Shown here: positions 6,872 to 59,000 of the stretch, piece by piece
Layout: each line of letters opens with the position of its first letter
How positions within the stretch are numbered: the first letter of the stretch is position 1
From: Octopus sinensis
Lineage: Eukaryota
Direction of reading: 5' to 3'
NCBI RefSeq assembly: GCF_006345805.1
Contig: NC_043010.1
Location: 4,092,001-4,156,000, forward strand
DNA length: 64,000 nucleotides
Program-made: the position numbers and the translations under genes
Notes under the pieces: model-generated
What the model was told of the DNA's origin: nothing
Database searches by the model: none
Seen by the model: only the letters and a program-made list of their open reading frames with translations

Positions 6872-7380
6872 TACTATCATCATCATCATCATCATTTAAC
6901 GTCTGCCCTTCATACTGGCATGGGTAGGACGGTTTGACAGGAGCCGACCAGGCAGAAGCCTGCACCAGACTTCTGTGACTGTTTTGGCAGGATTTTCACA
7001 GCTGGATGCCCTTCCAACACCAACCACTCAGCAGAGTGGAATTAGTGCTTTTTACGTGGCACAAGCACAGGCATGGTCAGTTTTGGCAAGGTTTTTACAG
7101 CTGGATGCCCTTCCAAATGCCAACCCCTTTACAGTGTGGGCTGGGTACTTTTAAGTGGCAGCTGCACTGACAGGGTCCCCAAGTACTTGCAAGACAAAAA
7201 AAAACAACTTTCGAGAGGTAAGAGGACATTGGAGGTGATATTGTGTCAGATGACCAAAAGGTTATAGTGAGAGAGAGACGGAAACTGGTGTCTTGCTGTG
7301 GAGGAGGTACAAGGTTACTTGGCTGTAGAGAGAGAGAGAGAGATATCGTGAGAGAGAGAGAGATCAAGAATGAAGACAGA
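6480..7380. mobile_element. Inverted pair of family D-related copies (+ ~6480-6690, - ~6880-7380)
   Basis: + copy ends in (GAT)n/(GGT)n; - copy starts with (CAT)n and has two ctggatgcccttccaa cores. Confidence 0.7.
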
Positions 7381-8450: not shown

Positions 8451-8709
8451 TAACTAATTGCAATATTAGTCAAATCACTTTACACAGGTAATATCTCCCC
8501 ATGACCAAACCTGTTTCATAAGATTGGAAATGAAGCATTCTGTTTACATGATTGTGATGCTTATCTATGACTATCAGACAGTTTCCAAACAATGAGACAG
8601 CAACTCACACATATGCAAACAAGAATGCACACACACATATATATATATACGTTTATATATTTATATTTGTATATATGAGTGGACAAATTCACTCATATAT
8701 ATATATACT

Positions 8710-9040
8710 GGCTTCCGTGCCGGTGGCACATAAAAAGCACCATCCGAATCATGGCCGAAGCCAGTGCCGCCTTGACTGGCTTCCATGCTGGTGGCATGTA
8801 AAATGCACCAATCTGATCGTGGCCATTGCCAGCCTTGCTTGGCATCTGTGCAGGTGGCACGTAAAAAGCACCCACTACACTCATGGAGTGGTTGGCGTTA
8901 GGAAGGGCATCCAGCTGTAGAAACGCTGCTACGTCAGACTAGAGCCTGGTGCAGCCTTCTGGCTTCCCAGATCCCCGGTCGCACCGTCCAACCCATGCTA
9001 GCATGGAAAGCGGATGCTTAATGATGATGATGATGATGAT
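8710..9040 (+). mobile_element. SINE family D with (GAT)n tail
   Basis: Three ggcacgtaaaaagcacc-type units, ggttggcgttaggaagggcatccagc, tail ccaacccatgctagcatggaaa..gatgatgat. Confidence 0.85.
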
Positions 9041-17010: not shown

Positions 17011-18021
17011 TGCTGTGATCTTTCTAAAATTTACATTTAGACAATTATTATGTTTTACTATATCTATAAGATTTACCAACGTGAAAAATCCCATGTGACT
17101 TTTGAAACAAATTAAAAAGAATTGCTTCCACATTTATTTGTACATGGCTGTATTACCAGTGAACGAGGAAGCTATTTGTAAGAAACTTTAAGACTACTAG
17201 TATGAGCTATTTCATTTTGCATTTATTGAATGAGAAAAAAGAAAAAAAAGAAGCATAGTTTCAATTTTGATAACTTGTTGGCAATTGTTTTTGGGAATAT
17301 TAAACAAATATTGCAATTTCATATGTTTTTTCACTAAAAACAAATATAGCAAAATATAGTAAATAAATTTTGTTTATTTACAACTGAGGATTTATGTACA
17401 ATAAGTCTTTGCGAATATAATGTTTAAATATCTTATACAGCTTTTCACTCTCGTGCTCATGCCACTTTGCACTGAAATTTCACAGTATTTGTCTAAAATA
17501 AAACACTTTGTACTGTTTAAACATTAACATTCAAACAATTGTATGTTGAAATAGTTTTCTTGGTTAAAAATAAAGCGTTTGAACAAAACTAATGGAACAA
17601 TTCTGTGATAATTAGCTGACTCTGGGAAAATACAGAGCATCATATTTTAAAATTAAAAAAGCTAATTCTCTTTTTAAAGTAAGATTATTTTATTTCTTTT
17701 CTTTTTTTTTTATTAAACTAGAAAAACATCAACAACATGAAGCAAAATACAACTGTCAGTAATTACACAGAAGCTAAGTTAATGTTTTTCCTAGAAGAAT
17801 TATGTAGAAATAATTAGAACATTATATAAAATATATTCTGATTTGTGCAATATCTTTCTGTAGCACAGCAGTCATGCTTATTTACAATAATTAGAATAAT
17901 TATAGTGGGGTTTAAACATGTTTACTGTTAATTATATTGACATTTTATATTTGAAAAGAACCTATGTGTAACATTGGTGTTTCTCGTTAGAAAAGACTTA
18001 ATGAATGGAATAAAGTTATTT

Positions 18022-18345
18022 TTATGGTTTTGGTACTTTAGGTACAGATGGCAGGGGTTTGGGGAAAGAAGAGAAACTATTTTTTATTGGTAAATTCCAA
18101 GGTTCTGGGAGATTAGCAGTTTTTATTCTTAAGGATTTAAGATCAATAACATCATTGCAGACAATTTTTTGATCAACAATTGCTTGACAGGAAGGTTTTG
18201 TAGAAATATCCTTGGGTTTGTGTGTTGTCCATGGTAAAGAACTCCTACTTTTGTGTTGCTGTTGATCCTCTTGACAATGCTTGAAACCTCGTAAAAGTAA
18301 ACAAAGAAAACAAAAATGTTCATTGTGAGCTAAGATAAGGCTTTG
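18022..18345 (-). pseudogene. Start-less 107-codon open frame, likely remnant of a long C-terminal coding exon
   Basis: QSLILAHNEHFCFLCLLLRGFKHCQEDQQQHKSRSSLPWTTHKPKDISTKPSCQAIVDQKIVCNDVIDLKSLRIKTANLPEPWNLPIKNSFSSFPKPLPSVPKVPKP*. Long open frame in very AT-rich DNA; upstream 18350-19120 shows only 20-50 aa open pieces in shifting frames. Confidence 0.4.
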
Positions 18346-19124
18346 TTAACATTGATTTTTGTCTAAATTTAACTACTTTGGGTATACTTCTCTCCAGAAA
18401 GTTCCTCCTCTGGTATTTATCTCTATATTACTTAGAATAACAAGATTTTAGATGAATATAGCTTTTGTATACTCTTGTAGATTTTGTAGCATCTTAATTT
18501 TTATCACAATTTGGCTTCTGTTCTTTTTTTTTATTTCTTGTGATAAACAATGTGGAAATCTAATTGTAACTTTCCCTTTTACTTTATAAATAAACTTAGT
18601 CAAATAACATATATTTATGTTGATTTGTTGTTCATAATTTCACAATTCCAAACTGTAAGAATCCTTTCTGTTGTTGAACGTATTTGATATTTGTTGATTT
18701 TTGAAAAATAAATTGCTAATACATCTTTCAGGTTTTTATATTGTTTACTGTCATTAGTTCAGTCTTTCTTTAGCAATATTTAACATTTATTTCCCTTGTT
18801 TATCAGACACATTATAAGCATTATTCACAAGTAAATTGTAAATATAATTTGTGTCAGCAGAGATACTGAATTCTTATATATCTAAATTGTTTTAGATGAG
18901 TTATTACTAGAGAATTTTGAATTGTTAACATCGTCTTTTTTAAGCTCATACAAACTATATTTGTGTTTGTTTATCGACTGAGGATCATATAGATATATAA
19001 GTACTTTTTACAAACTCTTAAAGTTCCAGTTCATCCAACAGGTAGTACAATATTACTTCAAGTAATATTTCAATTATTTTTATTTTTTAGTGGCAACCAT
19101 ATTGGGGAGGATTCGATACTGGGC

Positions 19125-19239
19125 TTACTGACATTTAACATTCAATGAAGAACCATTGATTAAATCTTCTTCCATTTCCAGGCAAATATCTGCCACTTCT
19201 GAGAATGAATTTAGATTTACAAACATTTGTCCCATTTGT
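19125..19239 (-). CDS. Probable last (or penultimate) coding exon
   Basis: ttaatttacag|A CAA ATG... phase 2; (R)QMGQMFVNLNSFSEVADICLEMEEDLINGSSLNVKCQ then TAA at 19127-19125. An alternative donor CA|gtaagc lies at 19129. Confidence 0.6.
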
Positions 19240-19417
19240 CTGTAAATTAATTAGGAAAAATGTTGAAATTTTTGCGTAGTTTTTGAGTTTAATGCAAATA
19301 CTTTTCCTGATGACCAGTCTAGAGCATTTGAAGAAATATTTTTTTTGCAAAAAGGAAATAAAAAAAAAACAACTAAAATCGTAAAATAATTGTTTTTCAT
19401 CAGTATTGAAATCTTAC

Positions 19418-19472
19418 CTTGTTTTTAAGGTAGTAATATTTTTAAGGTAGTAATATTTTGAGTACTTACTAT
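19418..19472 (-). CDS. Small internal coding exon (55 nt)
   Basis: catttacag|AT AGT AAG TAC ... ACA AG|gtaaga. Phase 1 to 2, joining the flanking exons in frame: (D)SKYSKYYYLKNITTLKT(R). Confidence 0.6.
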
Positions 19473-19969
19473 CTGTAAATGCTATACATACTAAAGCGTA
19501 TGTTATACTAATTTGAAACTTCACCACTTTTTCTAATTTCAATTTTCTAATTTTTAGATTTCAAAGTGGATACCAAAATTCTCAACTCAAATGTCTTAGA
19601 GAAAGAATTGATTTGAAAACTAGTAGCACATTAGCTCAGCCACAGTCATACGGCTGGAACTAGTTAATGAATAAAGAGAAAAAAGTTTTGATCCTGTATA
19701 GATACTCAAAATATATACAATTTGCTAATCATGTTAACTGTGTTTTACAAAGCCAATGAAATAATTCATGTACCAGCTTTTGAACAAATTATTCTATATA
19801 AAGAAAACAATGTTTTTAACAGTCTGATCTCTAGAAAATTGTTCTATAATTGTTTGATAATAAATTAAGTGAAGTTGAAAGAGAGGTATTAGATTTAAAA
19901 AAAAATAGGAAAACTGTTAGCCTAGAAGGCTTGTAAATGACGGCAACTATTCTTTTATGATGTACATAC

Positions 19970-20120
19970 CTGGTAAGGTTTCATAATGTACTGTATTTCT
20001 CTCACTCCATCCATGTCCACTGTCACTATCAGAAGACATAGTTGATATTTTATTGAAATGGTCAGTAGGTATGAGCATAAGTTCATGTTCTTTACTAACA
20101 CCAGATGTCACTGCAGCCTC
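19970..20120 (-). CDS. Internal coding exon (151 nt), protocadherin-like cytoplasmic segment
   Basis: Minus strand: pyrimidine tract ...gagtctttag| then open frame EAAVTSGVSKEHELMLIPTDHFNKISTMSSDSDSGHGWSERNTVHYETLP+G, then |gtatgt donor. Phase 0 to 1. Absent from the ORF track (under 60 aa). Confidence 0.75.
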
Positions 20121-22216
20121 CTAAAGACTCGTAATCAAACAAAATGAAGGTGAGAGAAAATTTGTTATATAACAAAAAAAAATAATAAAAAATAGAGAAA
20201 TATAATTTGTTTAATTACAATACACTTAAATTTCTTTTTAAATTAGAAAAATAGATATTCATATAATTTTATCAAACTTCTGAGGCTGTTTGAAAGCTAT
20301 ATGGTACAGTGAAATTTATTTTTAAAATATCAAATAGCTGGTTGAACAATATGCTAAATTTGCAATAAATGTGTTTAAAATATCCTTGTTTGCAATGGTG
20401 GCTTGTGGTTAATTTGTAGTGCACACAGAAATTATTTTATGAATATTATATGTAGCAATACCCATTTATTTTAGTTTAACCCATAGCTATTATTCATAAC
20501 AAATATATTTTAAATATTACTGTAAAACTGTATATGGTGTTGCCTGGGTACATTATTAATTGCTGTATAATGAGCCATTAAAGAGCCATTAGAATCTGCT
20601 TGCTAAAGTATCGCTCGTATCTCTTTTCTAATGCAATGTGTCATTTCCAAATGCATTTAGCTCACAATGAATGAGATCAGATTTCTCAGAAATCCTTGAA
20701 ATATTTTATATCAATCTCTTAGTTCCTTGTGTGAGAGAATGTTCCACAGAATAAGTGTTTTTAATACTGTACGCTTTTAATAGTGTTAAATAATAAAGTG
20801 TAAACTAGCAGCTAGGAATGGATGTTATTAGAAACAATTTCCAACCCATGCTAGCATGGGACACAAGCATTAGATGATAATGCTGAAGACGATGATGATG
20901 ATTATATGTTATCTATATTTCAAAACTTTACATTTACAACTGCATTTTTGTAATGAAGGCATTATATGCAACACTAACATTTAAGTTCTCAGAACAGATT
21001 CTAAACACAGCCATAAAAGCATATATACGAATCAGTAAACTCAAATGTTTAATATTCAAGACATTTGGATTTTATTTCTATAATTTTTAATATGAAAATT
21101 ATTTTTATAATTTTTGTAGTTGCACAATTATTAAAGCAATGGACAAAATACCTAGTTTTAGTAATTATTTTCTGGCTTCAAATCTTGGTGAAAATCACAT
21201 AGCCTTTTATCTTTTTAGGGTCATGAAGATAGTTTAAGGGGATTCTTAGTTATTAAAATGGGTCTCTCATTAACTGGGTTAGTCGCAAAAAACACAAACT
21301 TTGAATAAATACAATAAATACTAGTAATCATATTACAGGGAGCTGTAGGGAGAGTTTATCCAAACTTGTTGAACCTGTCTTGGCTATACAGAGGAAAAAG
21401 GTTAATAAAATAAGTTGTTAGTTAGATTTAGTTAAATTGATTAAGTCCTGCTACTAAAATATGTGTCTTCTTTGTACCTGAGATAGAAATCATTACTTCT
21501 ATCTCAGGAAATTCACATCAAATTACATCTAAAATATTGAAGTATATTCATATGTCTCTATATAAAATGACATACTTTTAATGACAAAAATAAGCTTTTA
21601 ATATCCATTATTTCAGTTTTCTTTTAAAACTATGTATCGAGTATCTAGATGTCTGAAATTAGGAATTTTTGCTAAGACTAATTTTTCATATAGACTATTA
21701 AGCAAATCTTTAGCAATAGAAGCCTCTTTTTTTCTCTTTTAAATATGTACATTTATTCCTACTTTCCATTTAGCTTGATCTCCAATCATCATCAGGTGTT
21801 TTATTCCTGGATTATGCATAGTTACAGGATTGGGTTAAGACTAAGGACCACTGTTTTTTAAACTAAGGGTAACAGTGTTTTTATCAATTAGACAATTATT
21901 CACATCTGTGAGTATGACACCTGATGATGATCAGGCATCACCTGAATCGAAATGTCATGTTAGCATTTTGAATTTTAAAAAATGAGGTTAATTGCCTGCC
22001 AAAATTATATTCTTATCAGCATATCTATCAACATATTTATAGTCACCATTGAATGTCTTATTTGAGTAAGCTGTTTTATTAAAAGTAATCAGATTCAATT
22101 TTATACGATCATTTGGAAGAACAAGAAACCCTTTGGATTTTGCTCTAAATTACTTCAGATATCATATATATATGTGTAAGTATATACATAATATATATAT
22201 ATATGTGTGTGTGTAT

Positions 22217-22297
<81 letters not shown>

Positions 22298-22881
22298 CAT
22301 ATATGTGTGTGTATATATATACATATGTATGTATAAGTATATATGTAGGTATATGTGTCTATATATATATATATATGTATGTATGTATGTATATGTATAT
22401 CTATGTATATACATACACCCGTATGTATATGTATATATGCATATGTATGTATGTATGTGTGTGTATAACTTGAGTCGTACTAATTAGTAAGTCTTTTTGT
22501 TTTCTTTCATAGATTGCTATATTTTAAAATTAGATTTAGTTTAGCAAGCCCTTTTTTTTTATCCAAGTTTCATTGGTTTATAAATATTTCAATATTGCAA
22601 TAAATTCTACAAAAGAAGTATGAAAAAAAATAAAAGCCAAAACAAAATTTTCTTCAATAAATCTAATTGATATCACTAAGAATGACAGCAGTTAAACTTT
22701 GGTTTTGACATTTCAAAAGTGAGAATAAACTCAGGAACATAAATAAAGACAACAGAAAAGAAGAAAAAAAAAAAGGAAAAAAAAAAGAAACAAAGCAAAG
22801 ATAGGAAAGCAAAAACGATCAATTTAGATTCTAGCCAGTTTTCATTATTAATAATAAATAGAAGTATATCTACGATATCGT

Positions 22882-23068
22882 TTAAAAATACATCTGATGA
22901 AATCTATATTTCTGAAACTGTAGAGTTTCTCCTATTTTAATTTTCCTACAAACGATGAATTCTGAAAGGATTCTAGAAATTGGCTTGTAAAGTCTATAAA
23001 ATGTCTGAGGTTTGACATAAGAGATTTGCTTTAAATTATTAAGTATACTATTTGATGCAGCAACTCTT
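22882..23068 (-). pseudogene. Putative exon, copy 1 (possible degenerate last EC/transmembrane/juxtamembrane part)
   Basis: Strong acceptor ttttgtctattctctaacag|; RVAASNSILNNLKQISYVKPQTFYRLYKPISRILSEFIVCRKIKIGETLQFQKYRFHQMYF*. No convincing in-phase donor found. Confidence 0.35.
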
Positions 23069-23487
23069 CTGTTAGAGAATAGACAAAATTGGCAAGAAAG
23101 TGAACATAAAAAATATATAGACACCAATTTATTGGCATCACTCAACTTATGTATATGTTATAAATGTTTACTAGTTTCGCAGCCAATATTGTAATTCTTT
23201 TTTGTTCTCTTTCTTTCTTTCTTCCTGTCTTCCTTTCTTCCTTTCTTTTTTTTTTCCCCCTTCTTTCGTTTTTGATATTAGAAAATTAAACATTTAGTTA
23301 TCATATATCAAGCCAAAACTGAATCTTAGAAAGTGAAGGCTCATAAAAGAAAAAGTAAAGAAGCAAATATATATATATATATTATATATATATATATACA
23401 TATGTATATGTGTGTATATATATATATATACATATATGTGTGTGTATAATATATACATATGTATGTATAAGTATATATGTAGGTATA

Positions 23488-23532
<45 letters not shown>

Positions 23533-23986
23533 ATGTATATCTATGTATATACATACACCCGTATGTATATGTATATATGCATATGTATGTATGTATGCGT
23601 GTGTATAACTTGAGTCGTACTAATTAGTAAGTCTTTTTGTTTTCTTTCATAGATTGCTATATTTTAAAATTAGATTTAGTTTAGCAAGCCCTTTTTTTTT
23701 ATCCAAGTTTCATTGGTTTATAAATATTCCAATATTGCAATAAATTCTACAAAAGAAGTATGAAAAAAAATAAAAGCCAAAACAAAATTTTCTTCAATAA
23801 ATCTAATTGATATCACTAAGAATGACAGCAGTTAAACTTTGGTTTTGACATTTCAAAAGTGAGAATAAACTCAGGAACATAAATAAAGACAACAGAAAAG
23901 AAGAAAAAAAAAAGGAAAAAAAAAAGAAACAAAGCAAAGATAGGAAAGCAAAAACGATCAATTTAGATTCTAGCCAGTTTTCATTA

Positions 23987-24206
23987 TTAATAATAAATAG
24001 AAGTATATCTACGATATCGTTTAAAAATACATCTGATGAAATCTATATTCTGAAACTGTAGAGTTTCTCCTATTTTAATTTTCCTACAAACGATGAATTC
24101 TGAAAGGATTCTAGAAATTGGCTTGTAAAGTCTATAAAATGTCTGAGGTTTGACATAAGAGATTTGCTTTAAATTATTAAGTATACTATTTGATGCAGCA
24201 ACTCTT
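23987..24206 (-). pseudogene. Putative exon, copy 2 (within 1.14-kb tandem duplication)
   Basis: Same acceptor and frame as copy 1; one T fewer (tatattctg vs tatatttctg) changes the end to ...LQFQNIDFIRCIFKRYRRYTSIYY*. Confidence 0.33.
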
Positions 24207-24501
24207 CTGTTAGAGAATAGACAAAATTGGCAAGAAAGTGAACATAAAAAATATATAGACACCAATTTATTGGCATCACTCAACTTATGTATATGTTATA
24301 AATGTTTACTAGTTTCGCAGCCAATATTGTAATTCTTTTTTGTTCTCTTTCTTTCTTTCTTCCTGTCTTCCTTTCTTCCTTTCTTTTTTTTTTCCCCCTT
24401 CTTTCGTTTTTGATATTAGAAAATTAAACATTTAGTTATCATATATCAAGCCAAAACTGAATCTTAGAAAGTGAAGGCTCATAAAAGAAAAAGTAAAGAA
24501 G

Positions 24502-32110: not shown

Positions 32111-33440
32111 AATTATATTAGTATCTATTAATTCATGTTAGCATGGATATAATTGATTTTTTTTGCCAAATTTAGCATCTTCTCAGCCATAAAGTGAATC
32201 AAAAATATTATTCTCTCAGACCCTATACAATCAAAGGAAAAGTATGATATATAGAATATATGAAATCATTGGAGAGATTTGGAGAATGGTATCAATAAAT
32301 ATGTCTATATGAGGATATTTAGTATATATTCAAATTCAAACTGTTTGAGTAATGAGGGCCATTTTCAATATCAAAATAAATATCAAATGGAAATTGTAGC
32401 TGTGATACCTGTGCCGGTAGCATGTAAAAAGCACCATTCGAACGTGGCCGATGCCAGCGCCGCCTTGACTGGCTTCTGTCCCGGTGGCATGTAAAAAGCA
32501 CCAACCGATCGTGGCCGTTGCCAGCCTTCCCTGGCACGTAAAAAGCCCCCACTACACTCATGGAGTGGTTGGCGTTAGGAAGGGCATCCAGCTGTAGAAA
32601 CACTGCCAGATCAAGACTGGAGCCTGGTGCAGCCCACTGGTTTCCCAGACCCTGGTCAAACCGTCCAACCCATGCTAGCATGGAAAACGCACGTTAAACG
32701 ATGATGATGATGATAAAAAAAGATATGAACAAAAATGTAGAAGCTATACCTGGATCCTCAACACTACACACTGTCTAAAAAATAGCACTGCAGAGAACAG
32801 CCCATAGCCTACGCAAGACACTATCAATTCAATAATACAATCAAAGCAAAGCAGCCCACAAATACACGATACATACTCTATAGCATTTACCCAGTGAAAT
32901 AAACTTCCTCCAGCAATCCAGAAAGCCAACACATTACACACCCAACATACAATACAAGCAGTAATAATAACAAAAGACTGCACCACACCTCAAGAGAAGA
33001 AAAAAAGGACACAATACAGTATCAGAAAGAGTTTGCACACCCCCAACAGCAGAAAAGAATGCACGGCAGCAACACAGAAGTGCAGCAGGTAATGCAGCAG
33101 AAATTTGCCTCACTCTACCAAATATTGAACAGTTACATGATGATGATGATGGTGGTGGTGGTTGTGGCGGCGACGGTGCTGATGATAATGGTGATGATGA
33201 GTATGGAAAGTTTGAATTTGAATATATACTAAATATCCTCATATAGGCATATTTATTGATACCATTCTCCAAATCTCTCCAATGATTTCACATATTCTAT
33301 ATATCATACTTTTCCTTTGATTGTATAGGGTCTGAGAGAATAATATTTTTGATTCACTTTATGGCTGAGAAGATGCTAAATTTGGCTAAAAAAATCAATT
33401 ATATCCATGCTAACATGAATTAATAGATACTAATATAATT
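32111..33440. repeat. 232-bp inverted repeat (32111-32342 / 33209-33440)
   Basis: Arms are reverse complements; I see two mismatches; 866-bp spacer. Confidence 0.95.
32400..32712 (+). mobile_element. SINE family D inside the LINE insertion
   Basis: As above. Confidence 0.85.
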
Positions 33441-39754: not shown

Positions 39755-40048
39755 ATGCACGTAAAAGCACCATCCGTTCATGTCCGTTGTCAGCCTCGCC
39801 TGGCCCCCATGCCGGTGGCACGTAGCACCATATGTTCATGGCCGTTGCCAGCCTCGCCTGGCCCCCGTGCCGGTGGCACGTAAAAGCACCCACTACACTC
39901 ACAGAGTGGTTGGCGTTAGGAAGGGCATCCAGCCGTAGAAACACTGCCAGATCAGACTGGGCTGATGCAGCCTTCTGGCTTCACTGACCCCAGCTGAACC
40001 GTCCAACCCATGCTAGCATGGAAAGCAGACGCTAAATGATGATGATGA
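39755..40048 (+). mobile_element. SINE family D
   Basis: As above. Confidence 0.85.
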
Positions 40049-40049
40049 T

Positions 40050-40660
40050 ACTATCTCAGTTGAGAGTCTTGCTACTTCAGAATGGAAAGATGGTGATTGT
40101 CATGTCTTTTACCATCCTCACAGCCTGACCCTACTGGTTTCCACTTGTGACCAAAACTTGGATGTCAAACACATTTGACAATATCATGGAGAGAAGCAGC
40201 TGGCACCGAGACAGCAGGAAGATTGATAATGTGTAGGGGTCAGAAACATTTGTTGTAGATATTATGGTATTGGTGACACAAAATGGAAGGCTGAGTAATT
40301 TGCTGATTTGGAAACAGTTGTTATTCAGCTAGGTACCAGTCAACCTTGAAAGTGTATGGCATATAGCCAAATGCTGCCGTGGAGCTTGGAAGTAGAGCTG
40401 AAACATGCTGATACTGGTCAAGAGAATTAAACAAGGCTATTCAAGACTTTATAGTACTGGATGGTCTCCTATTTATGTTAATTGATGCAATGTCTGCAAA
40501 ACTGAGGTTGATTCATATCTTGATTATATCAACAGTTTTGTATGTCCTGATCAAGGGGTTCTGTGAAGCTGTGGTGAACCTGATTGATGAGAGTATGGCA
40601 AAGGCCAGTAATGATAGACATGTTGGAAGTGCTTAATTAGTGTGGACTGAAAATCAAGGT
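40050..40660 (-). mobile_element. Degenerate LINE fragment
   Basis: GC-richer, coding-like on minus with many stops; resembles the RTE endonuclease-RT linker. Confidence 0.4.
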
Positions 40661-46924: not shown

Positions 46925-47265
46925 ACAATCATCATCATCGTTTAACGTCCGTTTTCCGCGCTAGCACGGGTTGGACGGTTCGACCGGGGTCTGGGAAGCC
47001 AGGGGCTGCACCAGGCTCCAGTCTGATCTGGCAGTGTTTCTACAGCTGGATGCCCTTCCTAACGCCAACCACTCCGTGAGTGTAGTGGGTGCTTTTTATG
47101 TGCCACCGGCACAGAAGCCAGTCGAGGCGGCGCTGGCATCGGCCACGTTCGGATGGTGCTTTTTATGTGCCACCGGCAAAGAAGCCAGTCGAGGCGGCGC
47201 TGGCATCAGCCACGTTCGGATGGTGCTTTTTATGTGCCACCGGCACAGAAGCCATTCGAGGCAGT
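46925..47265 (-). mobile_element. SINE family D with near-identical ~66-bp internal tandem units
   Basis: ggtgctttttatgtgccaccggc..agaagccagtcgaggcggcgctggcatc repeated at ~47088, 47155, 47221. Confidence 0.85.
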
Positions 47266-47586
47266 GCTTAATCTTCTCGTTATTTACTTTTTCATTAATA
47301 TATAATCACTTTTCTGATTCTGATATTAATCCCTGATGAACTCTGATTGCACACACCTATTGGATTCAAAAACCTTTATACAACTGCAGAATGAATGGTT
47401 TGTGTGTGTGTGTGTGTTAGTGGGCAAGGGATATATCTGTGTTTGTACACACACATGCATGCACACCCTCACACATACTCATATATATGCATACACACAC
47501 ACATGCATATTTATATACATATACATACATATGTGGAAACATACATAAGCTGCATTATATCAGATAAAACTTTAAAATTTCTCAAC

Positions 47587-57459: not shown

Positions 57460-57865
57460 AGGTGTAGGAGTGGCTGTGTGATAAGTAGCTTGCTTACGAA
57501 CCACATGGTTCCGGGTTCAGTGCCACTGCATAGCACCTTCGGCAAGTGTCTTTTACTATAGCCTCGAGCCAACCAAAGCCTTGTGAGTGGATTTGGTAGA
57601 CGGAAACTGAAAGAAGCCCGTCGTAAATATGTATATATATATATATATATGTATGTGTGTGAGTGTTTGTGTGTATGTTTGTCCCCCAACATCGCTTGGC
57701 AACCGATGCTGGTGTGTTTACGTCCCTGTAACTTAGCGGTTCAGCAAAAAAGACCGATAGAATAAGTACTAAGCTTACAAAAAATAAGTCCTGGGGTCGA
57801 TTTGCTCGACTAAAGGCTGTGCTCCAGCATGGCCACAGTCAAATGACTGAAACAAGTAAAAGAGA
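57460..57865 (+). mobile_element. SINE family B, full length
   Basis: ggtgtaggagtggctgtgtgataagtagcttgc head to gactgaaacaagtaaaagag tail. Confidence 0.85.
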
Positions 57866-57936
57866 GTGGAGGAAGTTATATATAAAAATATACAAAAATG
57901 TATATGAAGAAACCATGAAAGATCCATAGGGTTCAC

Positions 57937-59000
57937 TCTGTTGTGTTGCCAGCAATCTGTGGCAGGGAGCTCCATCATGCAGGAAAGTCTCACCTTCATC
58001 CAAGTTTGGTATCAAATTGTCCTTCAGCAACTGGATGTATTTGGCACTAGTCAAATTACCAACAATTTTAACCAACTTTTTTGAACCATCACTTTTTATG
58101 TGTCCCCAAAGCATCAGACTCTTACCCCAAATCTCCACTGTTTTCATAATGTAACATGGGTCATTTCACTTTCTTAGAGGCCTTCCGACAAATTCTCGCT
58201 TATTAGAAAGCAAAACAACCCACGATACATGATGAAAACAGTGAAGTATGGGGGGTAAGAGTCTGATGCTCTGGGGACACAGAAGAAGGGATAGTTCAAA
58301 GAAGTTGGTCAAAATCGTTGGTAATTTGACTAGTGTCAAATACATCCAGTTGCTGAAGGACAATTTGATACCAAACTTGGATGAAGGTGAGATCTTTCAG
58401 CATGACGGTGCTCCATGCCACAGATCAGGTGCAACACAACAGTGTCTGACTGGTGAAGGTGTTGCCATATTGAAAGATTGGCCAGCTCAGAGCCCTGACT
58501 TAAATATCATTCAGCAAATGTGGACAGAACTAAAGAGAAGAGTTTGTCAGAAGAATCCACACAATCTTGAAGAGTTGTGGGAGTTCAGCCACAGAGAATG
58601 GCATCTCATACCTGTGAAGGATTTGTACACATCTCTTCCCGGGCACATTCAAGCTAATGGAAGCCACACAAAATATCAACAATGTACAGTAACTTCTTGA
58701 AATGAACATTATGGAATAAATTTTCATTATAGACATTTTTCTGTTTTAAAACACTGTATCTTGATAGGTTTATGTGAGGTGGCCGGAAACATTTGCCTGG
58801 CCATTTTTTATGGTCGTCTTGCATCTTCCCCTCTCATTCAGAACCCCTGCTACAAAATATAATGATTAGGTATGGAAATAACTCCATCAGGGCCAATGTT
58901 CCATCTGTAAAAAACGCAATGTGAAACATCCACTTACAAGTTGGCAGTTGCTAGGAATGTAGAATAGTTTAAAGTGGCCGAAGACTTTTGCATGGTACTG
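57937..59000 (+). mobile_element. Tc1-like element 3' part with inverted duplication of the DDE segment
   Basis: ORF 58248-58700: FQHDGAPCH..WPAQSPDLNIIQQMW..GSHTKY; right end ..aagacttttgcatggtactg|TA; minus-strand copy of the same segment at 57937-58153. Confidence 0.85.

What the first reader, a model, noticed from the sequence alone, without database searches (positions are those of the whole stretch)
19125..20120. Three intact, in-frame cytoplasmic exons amid decayed ectodomain exons: a possible shared constant region
Seen: exons of 151, 55 and 111-115 nt with canonical AG/GT sites and phases 0-1, 1-2, 2-stop give a continuous 105-aa peptide with SSDSDSGHGWSE and EVADICLEMEEDL. From memory these resemble the SDSGRGGSE and ELC-EIDEL-type motifs of mollusc protocadherin tails (needs checking). 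Unlike upstream segments they have no stops. Inferred: they may still be spliced, possibly to an intact ectodomain exon beyond the right edge, analogous to the variable/constant layout of vertebrate clustered Pcdh genes. Chance survival in a pseudogene is the alternative.
Basis: partly seen in the sequence, partly recalled or inferred. Interest (0 to 1): 0.75.

Follow-up and report, generated by a model that had tools for sequence, protein, structure and literature searches.

The report
Protocadherin-type tail exons, partly mispredicted
One of the three proposed exons is a real, strongly conserved coding exon related to the cytoplasmic tails of octopus protocadherins. The other two are chance open frames, the true last exon lies 1.7 kb further on, and nothing here shows a shared "constant region".

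Summary
The window is octopus-like genomic DNA and the feature is on the minus strand. The 151-nt exon (20120-19970) is real. It is 149/151 identical to a related species against about 88% in the flanking introns, and both changes are synonymous. It belongs to a multi-copy exon family. The 55-nt and 115-nt "exons" are not real. The first carries a window-specific 17-nt tandem duplication and loses its frame and donor in the related species. The second has an in-frame TAA there. The same intron offers 734 equally open AG/GT chains. It matches annotated two-exon octopus genes (LOC106880961, LOC106870845, CAI9732409; tblastn E 5e-14). The corrected tail is 138 aa. Its first exon is homologous to the penultimate tail exon of bona fide octopus protocadherins (hhalign E 3e-6; 0/200 shuffles) and has the same exon phases. 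No cadherin-like sequence exists anywhere in the 64 kb, so the "decayed ectodomain exons" are not confirmed. A shared constant region is neither shown nor strictly excluded: at least six paralogous tail units exist, array protocadherins carry private tails, and published work denies constant-exon splicing. The upstream partner lies more than 44 kb away.

The parts
19970..20120 (-). Penultimate coding exon, 151 nt, phase 0 in and phase 1 out. It encodes EAAVTSGVSKEHELMLIPTDHFNKISTMSSDSDSGHGWSERNTVHYETLP plus the G of a split codon.
   Evidence: AG at 20122-20121 and GT at 19969-19968. 149/151 identical to the related-species contig against about 0.88 in introns, with both changes synonymous. 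Paralogous copies P0002, P0003, P0005, P0128, P0130 and P0131 all end at YETLP/A followed by a donor.
18022..18287 (-). True terminal coding exon, 266 nt including the TAA stop at 18024-18022. It completes the Gly codon (G|GT) and encodes FKHCQEDQQ...NDVIDLKSLRIKTANLPEPWNLPIKNSFSSFPKPLPSVPKVPKP*.
   Evidence: tblastn with P0130 (O. vulgaris CAI9732409) gives E 4.8e-14 and with P0131 (O. bimaculoides XP_014786627) E 8e-10. Smith-Waterman scores are 168 and 125, reached by 0 of 2000 shuffles. The poly-pyrimidine tract plus AG acceptor is in the same phase as in L008 and L009.
18288..19969 (-). Intron between the two real exons (1,682 nt). It contains both rejected 'exons'.
   Evidence: Follows from the two-exon structure of the annotated paralogs, whose introns are 4.8 kb in L008 and 9 kb in L009. 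Identity to L001 is intron-like, 0.82-0.89.
19418..19472 (-). Rejected as intronic sequence with a recent tandem duplication.
   Evidence: Perfect 17-nt x 2.2 tandem repeat at 19422-19459. Against L001: 30/39 identity, a 16-nt gap and loss of the donor.
19125..19239 (-). Rejected as a chance open frame.
   Evidence: In-frame TAA in L001/L002, and the alignment ends at 19197. No above-chance similarity to protocadherin last exons. The intron holds 27 alternative open terminal candidates.
20121..20165 (-). Conserved acceptor flank (poly-pyrimidine tract and branch region) of the real exon.
   Evidence: About 97% identical to L001 over 20164-20125. It is also retained between paralogs: L008 9916-10115 matches window 20162-19961.
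17709..17714 (-). First AATAAA downstream of the stop codon (307 nt into the presumed 3'UTR). A candidate polyadenylation signal.
   Evidence: Pattern scan. Inference only.

Best explanation
The locus holds the last two coding exons (151 nt at 20120-19970 and 266 nt at 18287-18022, minus strand) of one member of a multi-copy gene family conserved among octopods. Together they encode a 138-residue, probably disordered cytoplasmic tail. Its features are a serine/acid patch (SSDSDSGHGWSE), a YETLP exon end, an NDVIDLKS block and a proline-rich C-terminus (WNLPxxNSFxSxxKPLPxVP).

Shown. Both exons are real. Exon 1, and a paralogous whole tail, are under strong purifying selection between species. 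Exon 1 is homologous to the penultimate tail exon of genuine octopus protocadherins and has the same intron phases.

Inferred. The unit descends from, and most likely still serves as, the private 3' end of a protocadherin-type transmembrane gene. The large ectodomain/TM exon of that gene would lie more than 44 kb upstream, beyond the right edge of the window. That layout is typical of long-intron non-clustered protocadherins, not of a shared constant region. The tail would work as a docking segment, through phosphorylatable Ser/acidic and Pro-rich motifs, for intracellular partners.
For: - Exon 1 selection: 149/151 identity against 0.88 in introns, P = 1.3e-6, both changes synonymous. A second orthologous pair of a paralog shows the same, 146/148 against 0.77-0.90.
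- Whole-tail paralog: 127/128 identical between O. bimaculoides and O. vulgaris.
- Terminal exon: tblastn E 4.8e-14 and 8e-10, with the same acceptor phase in three loci.
- Link to protocadherins: hhalign of A2 against A3 gives probability 88%, E 3.3e-6, score 37.4, against shuffled controls of 10.4 +/- 2.0 with a maximum of 16.8.
- Gene structure: the genes for XP_052828955 (L010) and O. sinensis protocadherin beta-15 (L007) have a roughly 150-nt penultimate exon that starts in phase 0 and ends in phase 1 just after YEE(I/L)P, followed by a short terminal exon.
- Location of a paralog: P0130 lies on the O. vulgaris chromosome that carries protocadherin arrays, about 260 kb from P0017 and on the same strand.
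- Upstream coding sequence: exon 1 starts at a conserved acceptor directly after an in-frame TAG, so upstream coding or non-coding exons must exist.
Against: - No annotated protein among 1.84 billion representatives joins this exon family to cadherin repeats. The only annotated members are 124-128-aa 'uncharacterized' proteins.
- No cadherin-like sequence lies within 44 kb upstream in the window, 10 kb in L008 or 7 kb in L009. Array protocadherins, by contrast, keep their tails 0.3-5 kb away.
- The homology to protocadherin tails covers only 31 columns.
- Pfam finds nothing in the tail.
- Similarity to a PCDH9-like octopus or oyster tail is not significant.
- pN/pS over the first 13 codons among paralogs is too noisy to prove they are translated.
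- There are no transcript data.
Confidence: 0.55

Rival explanations
1. Stand-alone tail-only gene. A partial duplicate of a protocadherin 3' end has become an independent small gene. It would encode a soluble protein of about 125 aa that starts at Met14 of exon 1 (MLIPTDHF...), with any upstream exon non-coding, as the public annotations model its paralogs.
For: - Three independent annotations predict exactly this: XP_014786627 (LOC106880961), XP_014772563 (LOC106870845) and CAI9732409.
- No ectodomain exon lies near any of the three loci examined.
- Tail-only isoforms are also annotated for a true protocadherin-type tail (P0126, P0127).
- Codons 1-13 show no clear coding signature among paralogs.
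Against: - The Met is not conserved: paralog P0003 has W-V-I at that position.
- The frame is open from the acceptor in all copies, and VTSG..KE is conserved upstream of the Met.
- Annotated CDS starts at the first internal ATG are the usual artefact of 5'-incomplete models.
Confidence: 0.3
2. The tail exons are a constant region shared by several upstream variable ectodomain exons, as in vertebrate clustered protocadherins.
For: - The tail unit stands alone, with a phase-0 acceptor that needs an upstream exon and more than 44 kb of upstream sequence free of cadherin repeats.
- Paralogous units are likewise isolated.
- The exon is under strong constraint.
Against: - There is no junction evidence.
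- At least six paralogous tail units exist, not one per cluster.
- Protocadherin genes examined in arrays each carry private tail exons.
- PMC9068888 states explicitly that cephalopods do not use shared final exons.
- There is no sequence similarity to vertebrate constant regions: no Pfam hit, including Cadherin_tail.
Confidence: 0.08
3. Dead relic. The open frames are chance survivals in a decaying protocadherin pseudogene.
For: - No ectodomain lies nearby, and the locus is packed with repeats.
- The exon is absent from all annotated proteins.
- Exons 2 and 3 are indeed chance ORFs.
Against: - Exon 1 has 2 substitutions in 151 nt where about 18 are expected, and both are synonymous.
- Splice sites and flank are conserved.
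- The terminal exon is intact, with family motifs.
- A paralog is 127/128 identical between two species.
Confidence: 0.04

Closest known systems
Annotated but uncharacterized two-exon octopus genes: LOC106880961 (XP_014786627.2) and LOC106870845 (XP_014772563.1) in O. bimaculoides, and CAI9732409.1 in O. vulgaris
   Same: - Same two exons with the same split-codon junction after HYETL(P/A).
- Same motifs (DSGHG.SE, N[DN][VI]I[DN]LKS, WNLPxxNSFxSxxKPLP).
- 46-49% identity over the tail.
- Isolated from cadherin exons.
   Different: The window copy is a distinct paralog and is not present as an annotated protein in the databases searched. Its intron is shorter, 1.7 kb against 4.8-9 kb. The public models start at an internal Met.
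Tail exons of bona fide octopus protocadherins, e.g. XP_052828955.1 'protocadherin gamma-C4-like' (O. bimaculoides) and 'protocadherin beta-15' (O. sinensis)
   Same: - The penultimate exon is about 150 nt, phase 0 to phase 1.
- It has ..VTS.. near its start and ..SG..WSE....YE(E/T)(I/L)P at its end.
- A short terminal exon with a Pro-rich end follows.
- The homology is significant in a profile-profile comparison.
   Different: - In those genes the donor lies 9 nt further on.
- Their terminal exons are unrelated in sequence.
- Their tail exons sit 0.3-5 kb behind their own ectodomain/TM exon. Here none lies within 44 kb.
Vertebrate clustered protocadherin (alpha/gamma) constant exons
   Same: Small 3' exons that encode the C-terminal cytoplasmic tail and lie far from ectodomain exons.
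   Different: - There is no detectable sequence relationship (no Pfam hit).
- This unit is multi-copy.
- There is no evidence that it is shared.
- The literature denies this mechanism in cephalopods.
Vertebrate delta (non-clustered) protocadherin genes such as PCDH7, PCDH9 and PCDH11X
   Same: The gene plan is one giant ectodomain/TM exon, very long introns and short 3' exons carrying conserved cytoplasmic motifs (my own knowledge of these genes; CM motifs per PMC7339444). A DSG(H/R)G-type motif occurs in zebrafish and oyster relatives.
   Different: The resemblance is a 5-7-residue motif only. Profile comparison with PCDH9-like octopus and oyster tails is not significant, and Pfam 'Protocadherin' does not hit.

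Membership tests
Octopus 'HYETLP / WNLPxxNSF' two-exon tail family (LOC106880961-like) | Exon of about 150 nt with ..DSG(H/T)G(W/C).E....HYETL(P/A), ending in a phase-1 donor | tested here: met
   Window 20120-19970. Alignment A2 has 9 invariant columns. Donors checked in six loci.
Octopus 'HYETLP / WNLPxxNSF' two-exon tail family (LOC106880961-like) | Terminal exon with N[DN][VI]I[DN]LKS and WNLPxxNSFxSxxKPLP, followed by a stop | tested here: met
   Window 18287-18022. tblastn E 4.8e-14 and 8e-10. 0 of 2000 shuffles reach the score.
Octopus 'HYETLP / WNLPxxNSF' two-exon tail family (LOC106880961-like) | Purifying selection between species | tested here: met
   Exon 1 is 149/151 identical against 0.88 in flanks. 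Paralog tail 127/128. The orthologue of the window's terminal exon could not be obtained.
Protocadherin (cadherin superfamily) gene | Six or seven extracellular cadherin repeats (Pfam PF00028) and a TM segment encoded in the same gene | tested here: not met
   None in the 64-kb window on either strand. No annotated protein joins this tail to cadherin repeats. The exon could lie outside the window, so this is 'not met within the window' and not proof of absence.
Protocadherin (cadherin superfamily) gene | Cytoplasmic tail homologous to that of proven protocadherins | tested here: met
   hhalign probability 88%, E 3.3e-6, 31 columns. Shuffle control 0/200.
Protocadherin (cadherin superfamily) gene | Tail exon-intron plan of octopus protocadherins: phase 0, about 150 nt, phase 1, then a short last exon | tested here: met
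   L007 and L010 against the window. The donor is offset by 9 nt.
Clustered-protocadherin constant region (variable/constant splicing) | The same 3' exons spliced to multiple alternative upstream variable exons | not testable with these tools
   No transcript or junction data are available. Indirect evidence is against it.
Clustered-protocadherin constant region (variable/constant splicing) | Sequence similarity to the vertebrate constant domain (Pfam Cadherin_tail PF15974) | tested here: not met
   No Pfam family at E<=10 for the 138-aa tail or for four relatives.
Delta-protocadherin cytoplasmic motifs (CM1/CM2/CM3) | CM2-like DSG(K/R/H)G(D/G)S block within a conserved cytoplasmic domain | tested here: inconclusive
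   SDSGHGWSE resembles oyster SDSGRGGSD and zebrafish DSGHGDS in the alignment of PMC6339937. Profile comparisons are not significant, and that paper found no vertebrate CM motifs in octopus protocadherins.

The most novel reading that the evidence does not exclude
The HYETLP/WNLP tail units form a small set (at least six) of isolated, highly conserved 3' exon pairs with no ectodomain exon of their own. Each would be joined by very long-range splicing to several distant protocadherin ectodomain exons, or expressed as tail-only proteins that modulate protocadherin signalling. That would give octopus a partial, independently evolved analogue of the vertebrate variable/constant system, contrary to the current literature.
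Probability: 0.1. Interest if true: 0.75.

Novelty: new member of a known kind. Interest (0 to 1): 0.3.

Why it matters
How cephalopods wire large brains with over 160 protocadherins is an open question, and almost nothing is known about what their cytoplasmic tails do.

This locus adds one more copy of an octopod tail family that is very strongly conserved: 127/128 residues between two species for a paralog. That family is currently annotated only as short 'uncharacterized proteins', and here it is linked by homology and exon structure to genuine protocadherin tails.

Knowing whether these isolated tail units are 3' ends of long-intron protocadherins, independent tail-only proteins or shared exons would show how intracellular signalling diversity is organised in this independent expansion.

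In practical terms, the case shows that canonical splice sites plus open frames are not evidence in AT-rich introns. Two of the three proposed exons were false, and the true last exon was missed.

Tried and rejected
Rejected on cross-species disablements and on the abundance of chance chains.

2. **My own interim model.** This spliced exon 1 directly to an acceptor at 19200-19199, giving ...HYETLP-E-VADICLEMEEDL..., and was prompted by 'YEELPETLDLNICEIP' in O. sinensis protocadherin beta-15. I rejected it for three reasons. The similarity is at chance level. Homology with the related species stops exactly there. The annotated paralogs pointed to the real exon at 18287.

3. **Cadherin remnants in the window.** Searched by motif, tblastn and an octopus protocadherin HMM, and nothing was found. 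The only 'protocadherin' hits were a SINE wrongly included in the annotated protein P0098.

4. **Extra conserved exons upstream.** Looked for by tblastx and blastn against paralogous loci and by conservation against L001. Only exon 1 and its flank are shared. A conserved 100-nt patch at 20713-20614 has stops in all frames.

5. **Downstream 'DIC.E' exon in paralog contigs.** None found.

6. **Pfam on the peptides.** Only a noise hit to SwaI-like.

7. **Delta-protocadherin / PCDH9-like tail comparison.** Not significant.

8. **pN/pS of codons 1-13**, to decide whether translation starts at Met14. Too few sites.

9. **Rfam and tRNA scans of the window.** Empty.

10. **Literature search for the LOC identifiers.** Nothing found.

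11. **Albertin et al. 2015.** Not held in the library.

Full report
**Context.** The window is AT-rich (24-43% GC), repeat-laden animal DNA with no long ORFs apart from transposon debris. Its relatives are all octopod sequences. The finding lies on the minus strand.

**Checking the observation.** The three segments exist as described.
- 20120-19970 is 151 nt, 19472-19418 is 55 nt, and 19239 runs to the stop at about 19125.
- Each has AG/GT borders.

Whether this exceeds chance was tested in two ways.

First, I found an orthologous genomic contig from a related species (L001/L002, Logan assemblies of SRR11869394 and SRR11869385) through a short ORF that covers exon 1. It aligns to window 21237-19197 at about 85%.
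- Exon 1 is 149/151 identical, with two synonymous changes. The introns on either side are 0.88 identical, and the probability of two or fewer differences is 1.3e-6.
- The 55-nt segment falls in the worst-conserved bin. It shows 30/39 identity and a 16-nt gap that breaks the frame, and the GT donor is missing. The gap exists because the window carries a perfect 17-nt x 2.2 tandem duplication at 19422-19459 inside the supposed exon.
Homology stops at 19197 in two independent contigs.

Second, I enumerated the real intron. It holds 72 open AG...GT internal candidates, 27 open terminal candidates and 734 two-step chains compatible with exon 1's phase. Shuffles give about 42, 15 and 229. Open frames with canonical dinucleotides therefore carry no weight here.

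**What exon 1 belongs to.** An exhaustive phmmer search of 1.84 billion representative proteins found only four real relatives. All are short ORFs called on genomic contigs, and all begin at the acceptor and read through the donor after YETLP/A. Exon 1 is thus one of a family of paralogous exons.

Octopus proteomes are present in that library. Several annotated octopus protocadherins have tails with the same landmarks, for example ...PIEVTSYGDNRPSSNYPTDTLTSRKSSGQCWSERSSRQYEEIP... in XP_052828955 'protocadherin gamma-C4-like'.

A profile search then recovered short annotated proteins:
- P0131, XP_014786627, LOC106880961, O. bimaculoides, 124 aa;
- P0130, CAI9732409, O. vulgaris, 128 aa;
- its O. 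bimaculoides orthologue P0132, LOC106870845.

These continue after HYETLP(G/A) with LKS...N(D/N)(V/I)I(D/N)LKS...WNLPTRNSFTSY.KPLP..P.

**The true terminal exon.** tblastn of these proteins places that continuation in the window at 18324-18046 (E 4.8e-14 and 8e-10).

The acceptor, ttttgttttctttgtttacttttacgag|GT, is at 18289-18288 and matches the phase and context of the annotated acceptors in L008 and L009. The split codon G|GT gives Gly. The frame runs to TAA at 18024-18022, and AATAAA follows 307 nt later.

The corrected product is 138 aa: EAAVTSGVSKEHELMLIPTDHFNKISTMSSDSDSGHGWSERNTVHYETLPGFKHCQEDQQQHKSRSSLPWTTHKPKDISTKPSCQAIVDQKIVCNDVIDLKSLRIKTANLPEPWNLPIKNSFSSFPKPLPSVPKVPKP.

I had briefly favoured a direct splice to an acceptor at 19200-19199, which would give YETLP-E-VADICLEMEEDL. 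I dropped it. The motif similarity to the protocadherin beta-15 last exon is at chance (p 0.35-0.62), and the related species diverges at exactly that point.

**Selection.**
- Besides the window/L001 pair, a second paralog pair (L003 against O. vulgaris L008) shows 146/148 identity in the exon against 0.77-0.90 in the flanks.
- The complete two-exon tail of that paralog is 127/128 identical between O. vulgaris and O. bimaculoides.
- Between paralogs, pN/pS for codons 14-50 is 0.4-0.7. For codons 1-13 it is too noisy to interpret.

**Relation to protocadherins.** A profile of the window-type tails (A2) aligns to a profile of tails physically attached to cadherin repeats (A3). The probability is 88%, E 3.3e-6 over 31 columns. 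The score of 37.4 compares with 10.4 +/- 2.0 (maximum 16.8) for 200 column-shuffled controls.

Gene structures agree. In L010 (XP_052828955) and L007 (O. sinensis protocadherin beta-15) the penultimate exon is 147 nt in L007 and about 150 nt in L010. It enters in phase 0 and leaves in phase 1 just after YEE(I/L)P, with the donor 9 nt further on than here. It is followed by a short terminal exon.

However, profile comparison with those PCDH9-like tails is not significant, and Pfam recognises nothing in the tail.

**What is not there.** No cadherin repeat, intact or decayed, can be detected anywhere in the 64 kb. The only 'protocadherin' matches are copies of a SINE that was wrongly incorporated into the annotated protein P0098. 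The paralogous units are similarly isolated, with 10 kb clear on each side in O. vulgaris and 7 kb clear upstream in O. bimaculoides. Array protocadherins, by contrast, carry their own tail exons within 0.3-5 kb. P0130 sits on the O. vulgaris chromosome that carries protocadherin arrays, about 260 kb from P0017 and on the same strand.

**Interpretation.** The best reading (0.55) is that these are the private last two exons of a protocadherin-type gene whose large upstream exon lies beyond the window, across an intron of more than 44 kb. The main rival (0.3) is an independent tail-only gene, as annotated.

The shared constant-region idea (0.08) has no positive support and faces three objections:
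- the multiplicity of tail units;
- the private tails of array genes;
- the explicit statement in PMC9068888 that cephalopods do not splice variable first exons to shared final exons.

It cannot be excluded without transcripts. A dead relic is very unlikely given the selection signal.

**Verdict.** The exon family is already present in public annotations as uncharacterized proteins. This is therefore a new member of a known, though unstudied, kind.

Noticed in passing
window 22100-24350: A roughly 1.14-kb segment is tandemly duplicated at 93-100% identity (for example 22910-23209 equals 24048-24347 exactly). Each copy contains a TA/CA-rich microsatellite block. It is either a very recent duplication or an assembly artefact, and it lies inside the presumed long upstream intron.
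   Followed up: partly
window 6900-7150, 8700-9040, 32319-32714, 39757-40056, 46928-47336 and others: Many copies of one SINE-like repeat, which translates as ...LAWVGRFD...FLQLDALPNANHS... The same element forms the C-terminus of the annotated O. bimaculoides 'protocadherin beta-2-like' protein P0098, which looks like an annotation error in that public record.
   Followed up: partly
window 58245-58697 (+) and 57842-58165 (-): Two inverted fragments of a Tc1/mariner-type transposase. The plus-strand copy hits Pfam DDE_3 (E 4.9e-9). The minus-strand copy repeats the same GKSLMLWGH...KLVKIVGNLTS...LDEGE peptide.
   Followed up: partly
window 20614-20713 (-): A 100-nt intronic patch about 0.5 kb upstream of the real exon is 97-98% identical to the related species, against a background of 0.88, but has stops in all frames. 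It may be a conserved non-coding or splicing-regulatory element, or just noise.
   Followed up: partly
proteins P0018, P0023, P0026, P0027 and P0134 (O. bimaculoides / O. sinensis); locus L010: Several annotated octopus protocadherin models share a nearly identical EC4-EC5 block (NIDVNFISTQNHNTATILEDIKVGSFIAYVMVTDNDVGHNGQVNCHIKDDTFKLQSMGSKEYKIVLKKAVDRET...) behind different EC1-EC3 sequences, and two share a penultimate tail exon but differ in the last exon. This could reflect gene conversion, chimeric gene models or real alternative splicing.
   Followed up: no
locus L004 (paralogous exon copy), position about 307: This paralog of exon 1 has a GC (GCAAGT) donor in place of GT after YETLP. It could be a minor-class GC-AG intron or a disabled copy.
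   Followed up: no
locus L011 12082-16112 (O. vulgaris): Immediately downstream of the cadherin-repeat gene P0008, a separate 191-aa gene with no Pfam domain is annotated. It is probably the TM and tail part of the same protocadherin split off by the annotation. This shows that tails are often annotated as orphan genes.
   Followed up: no
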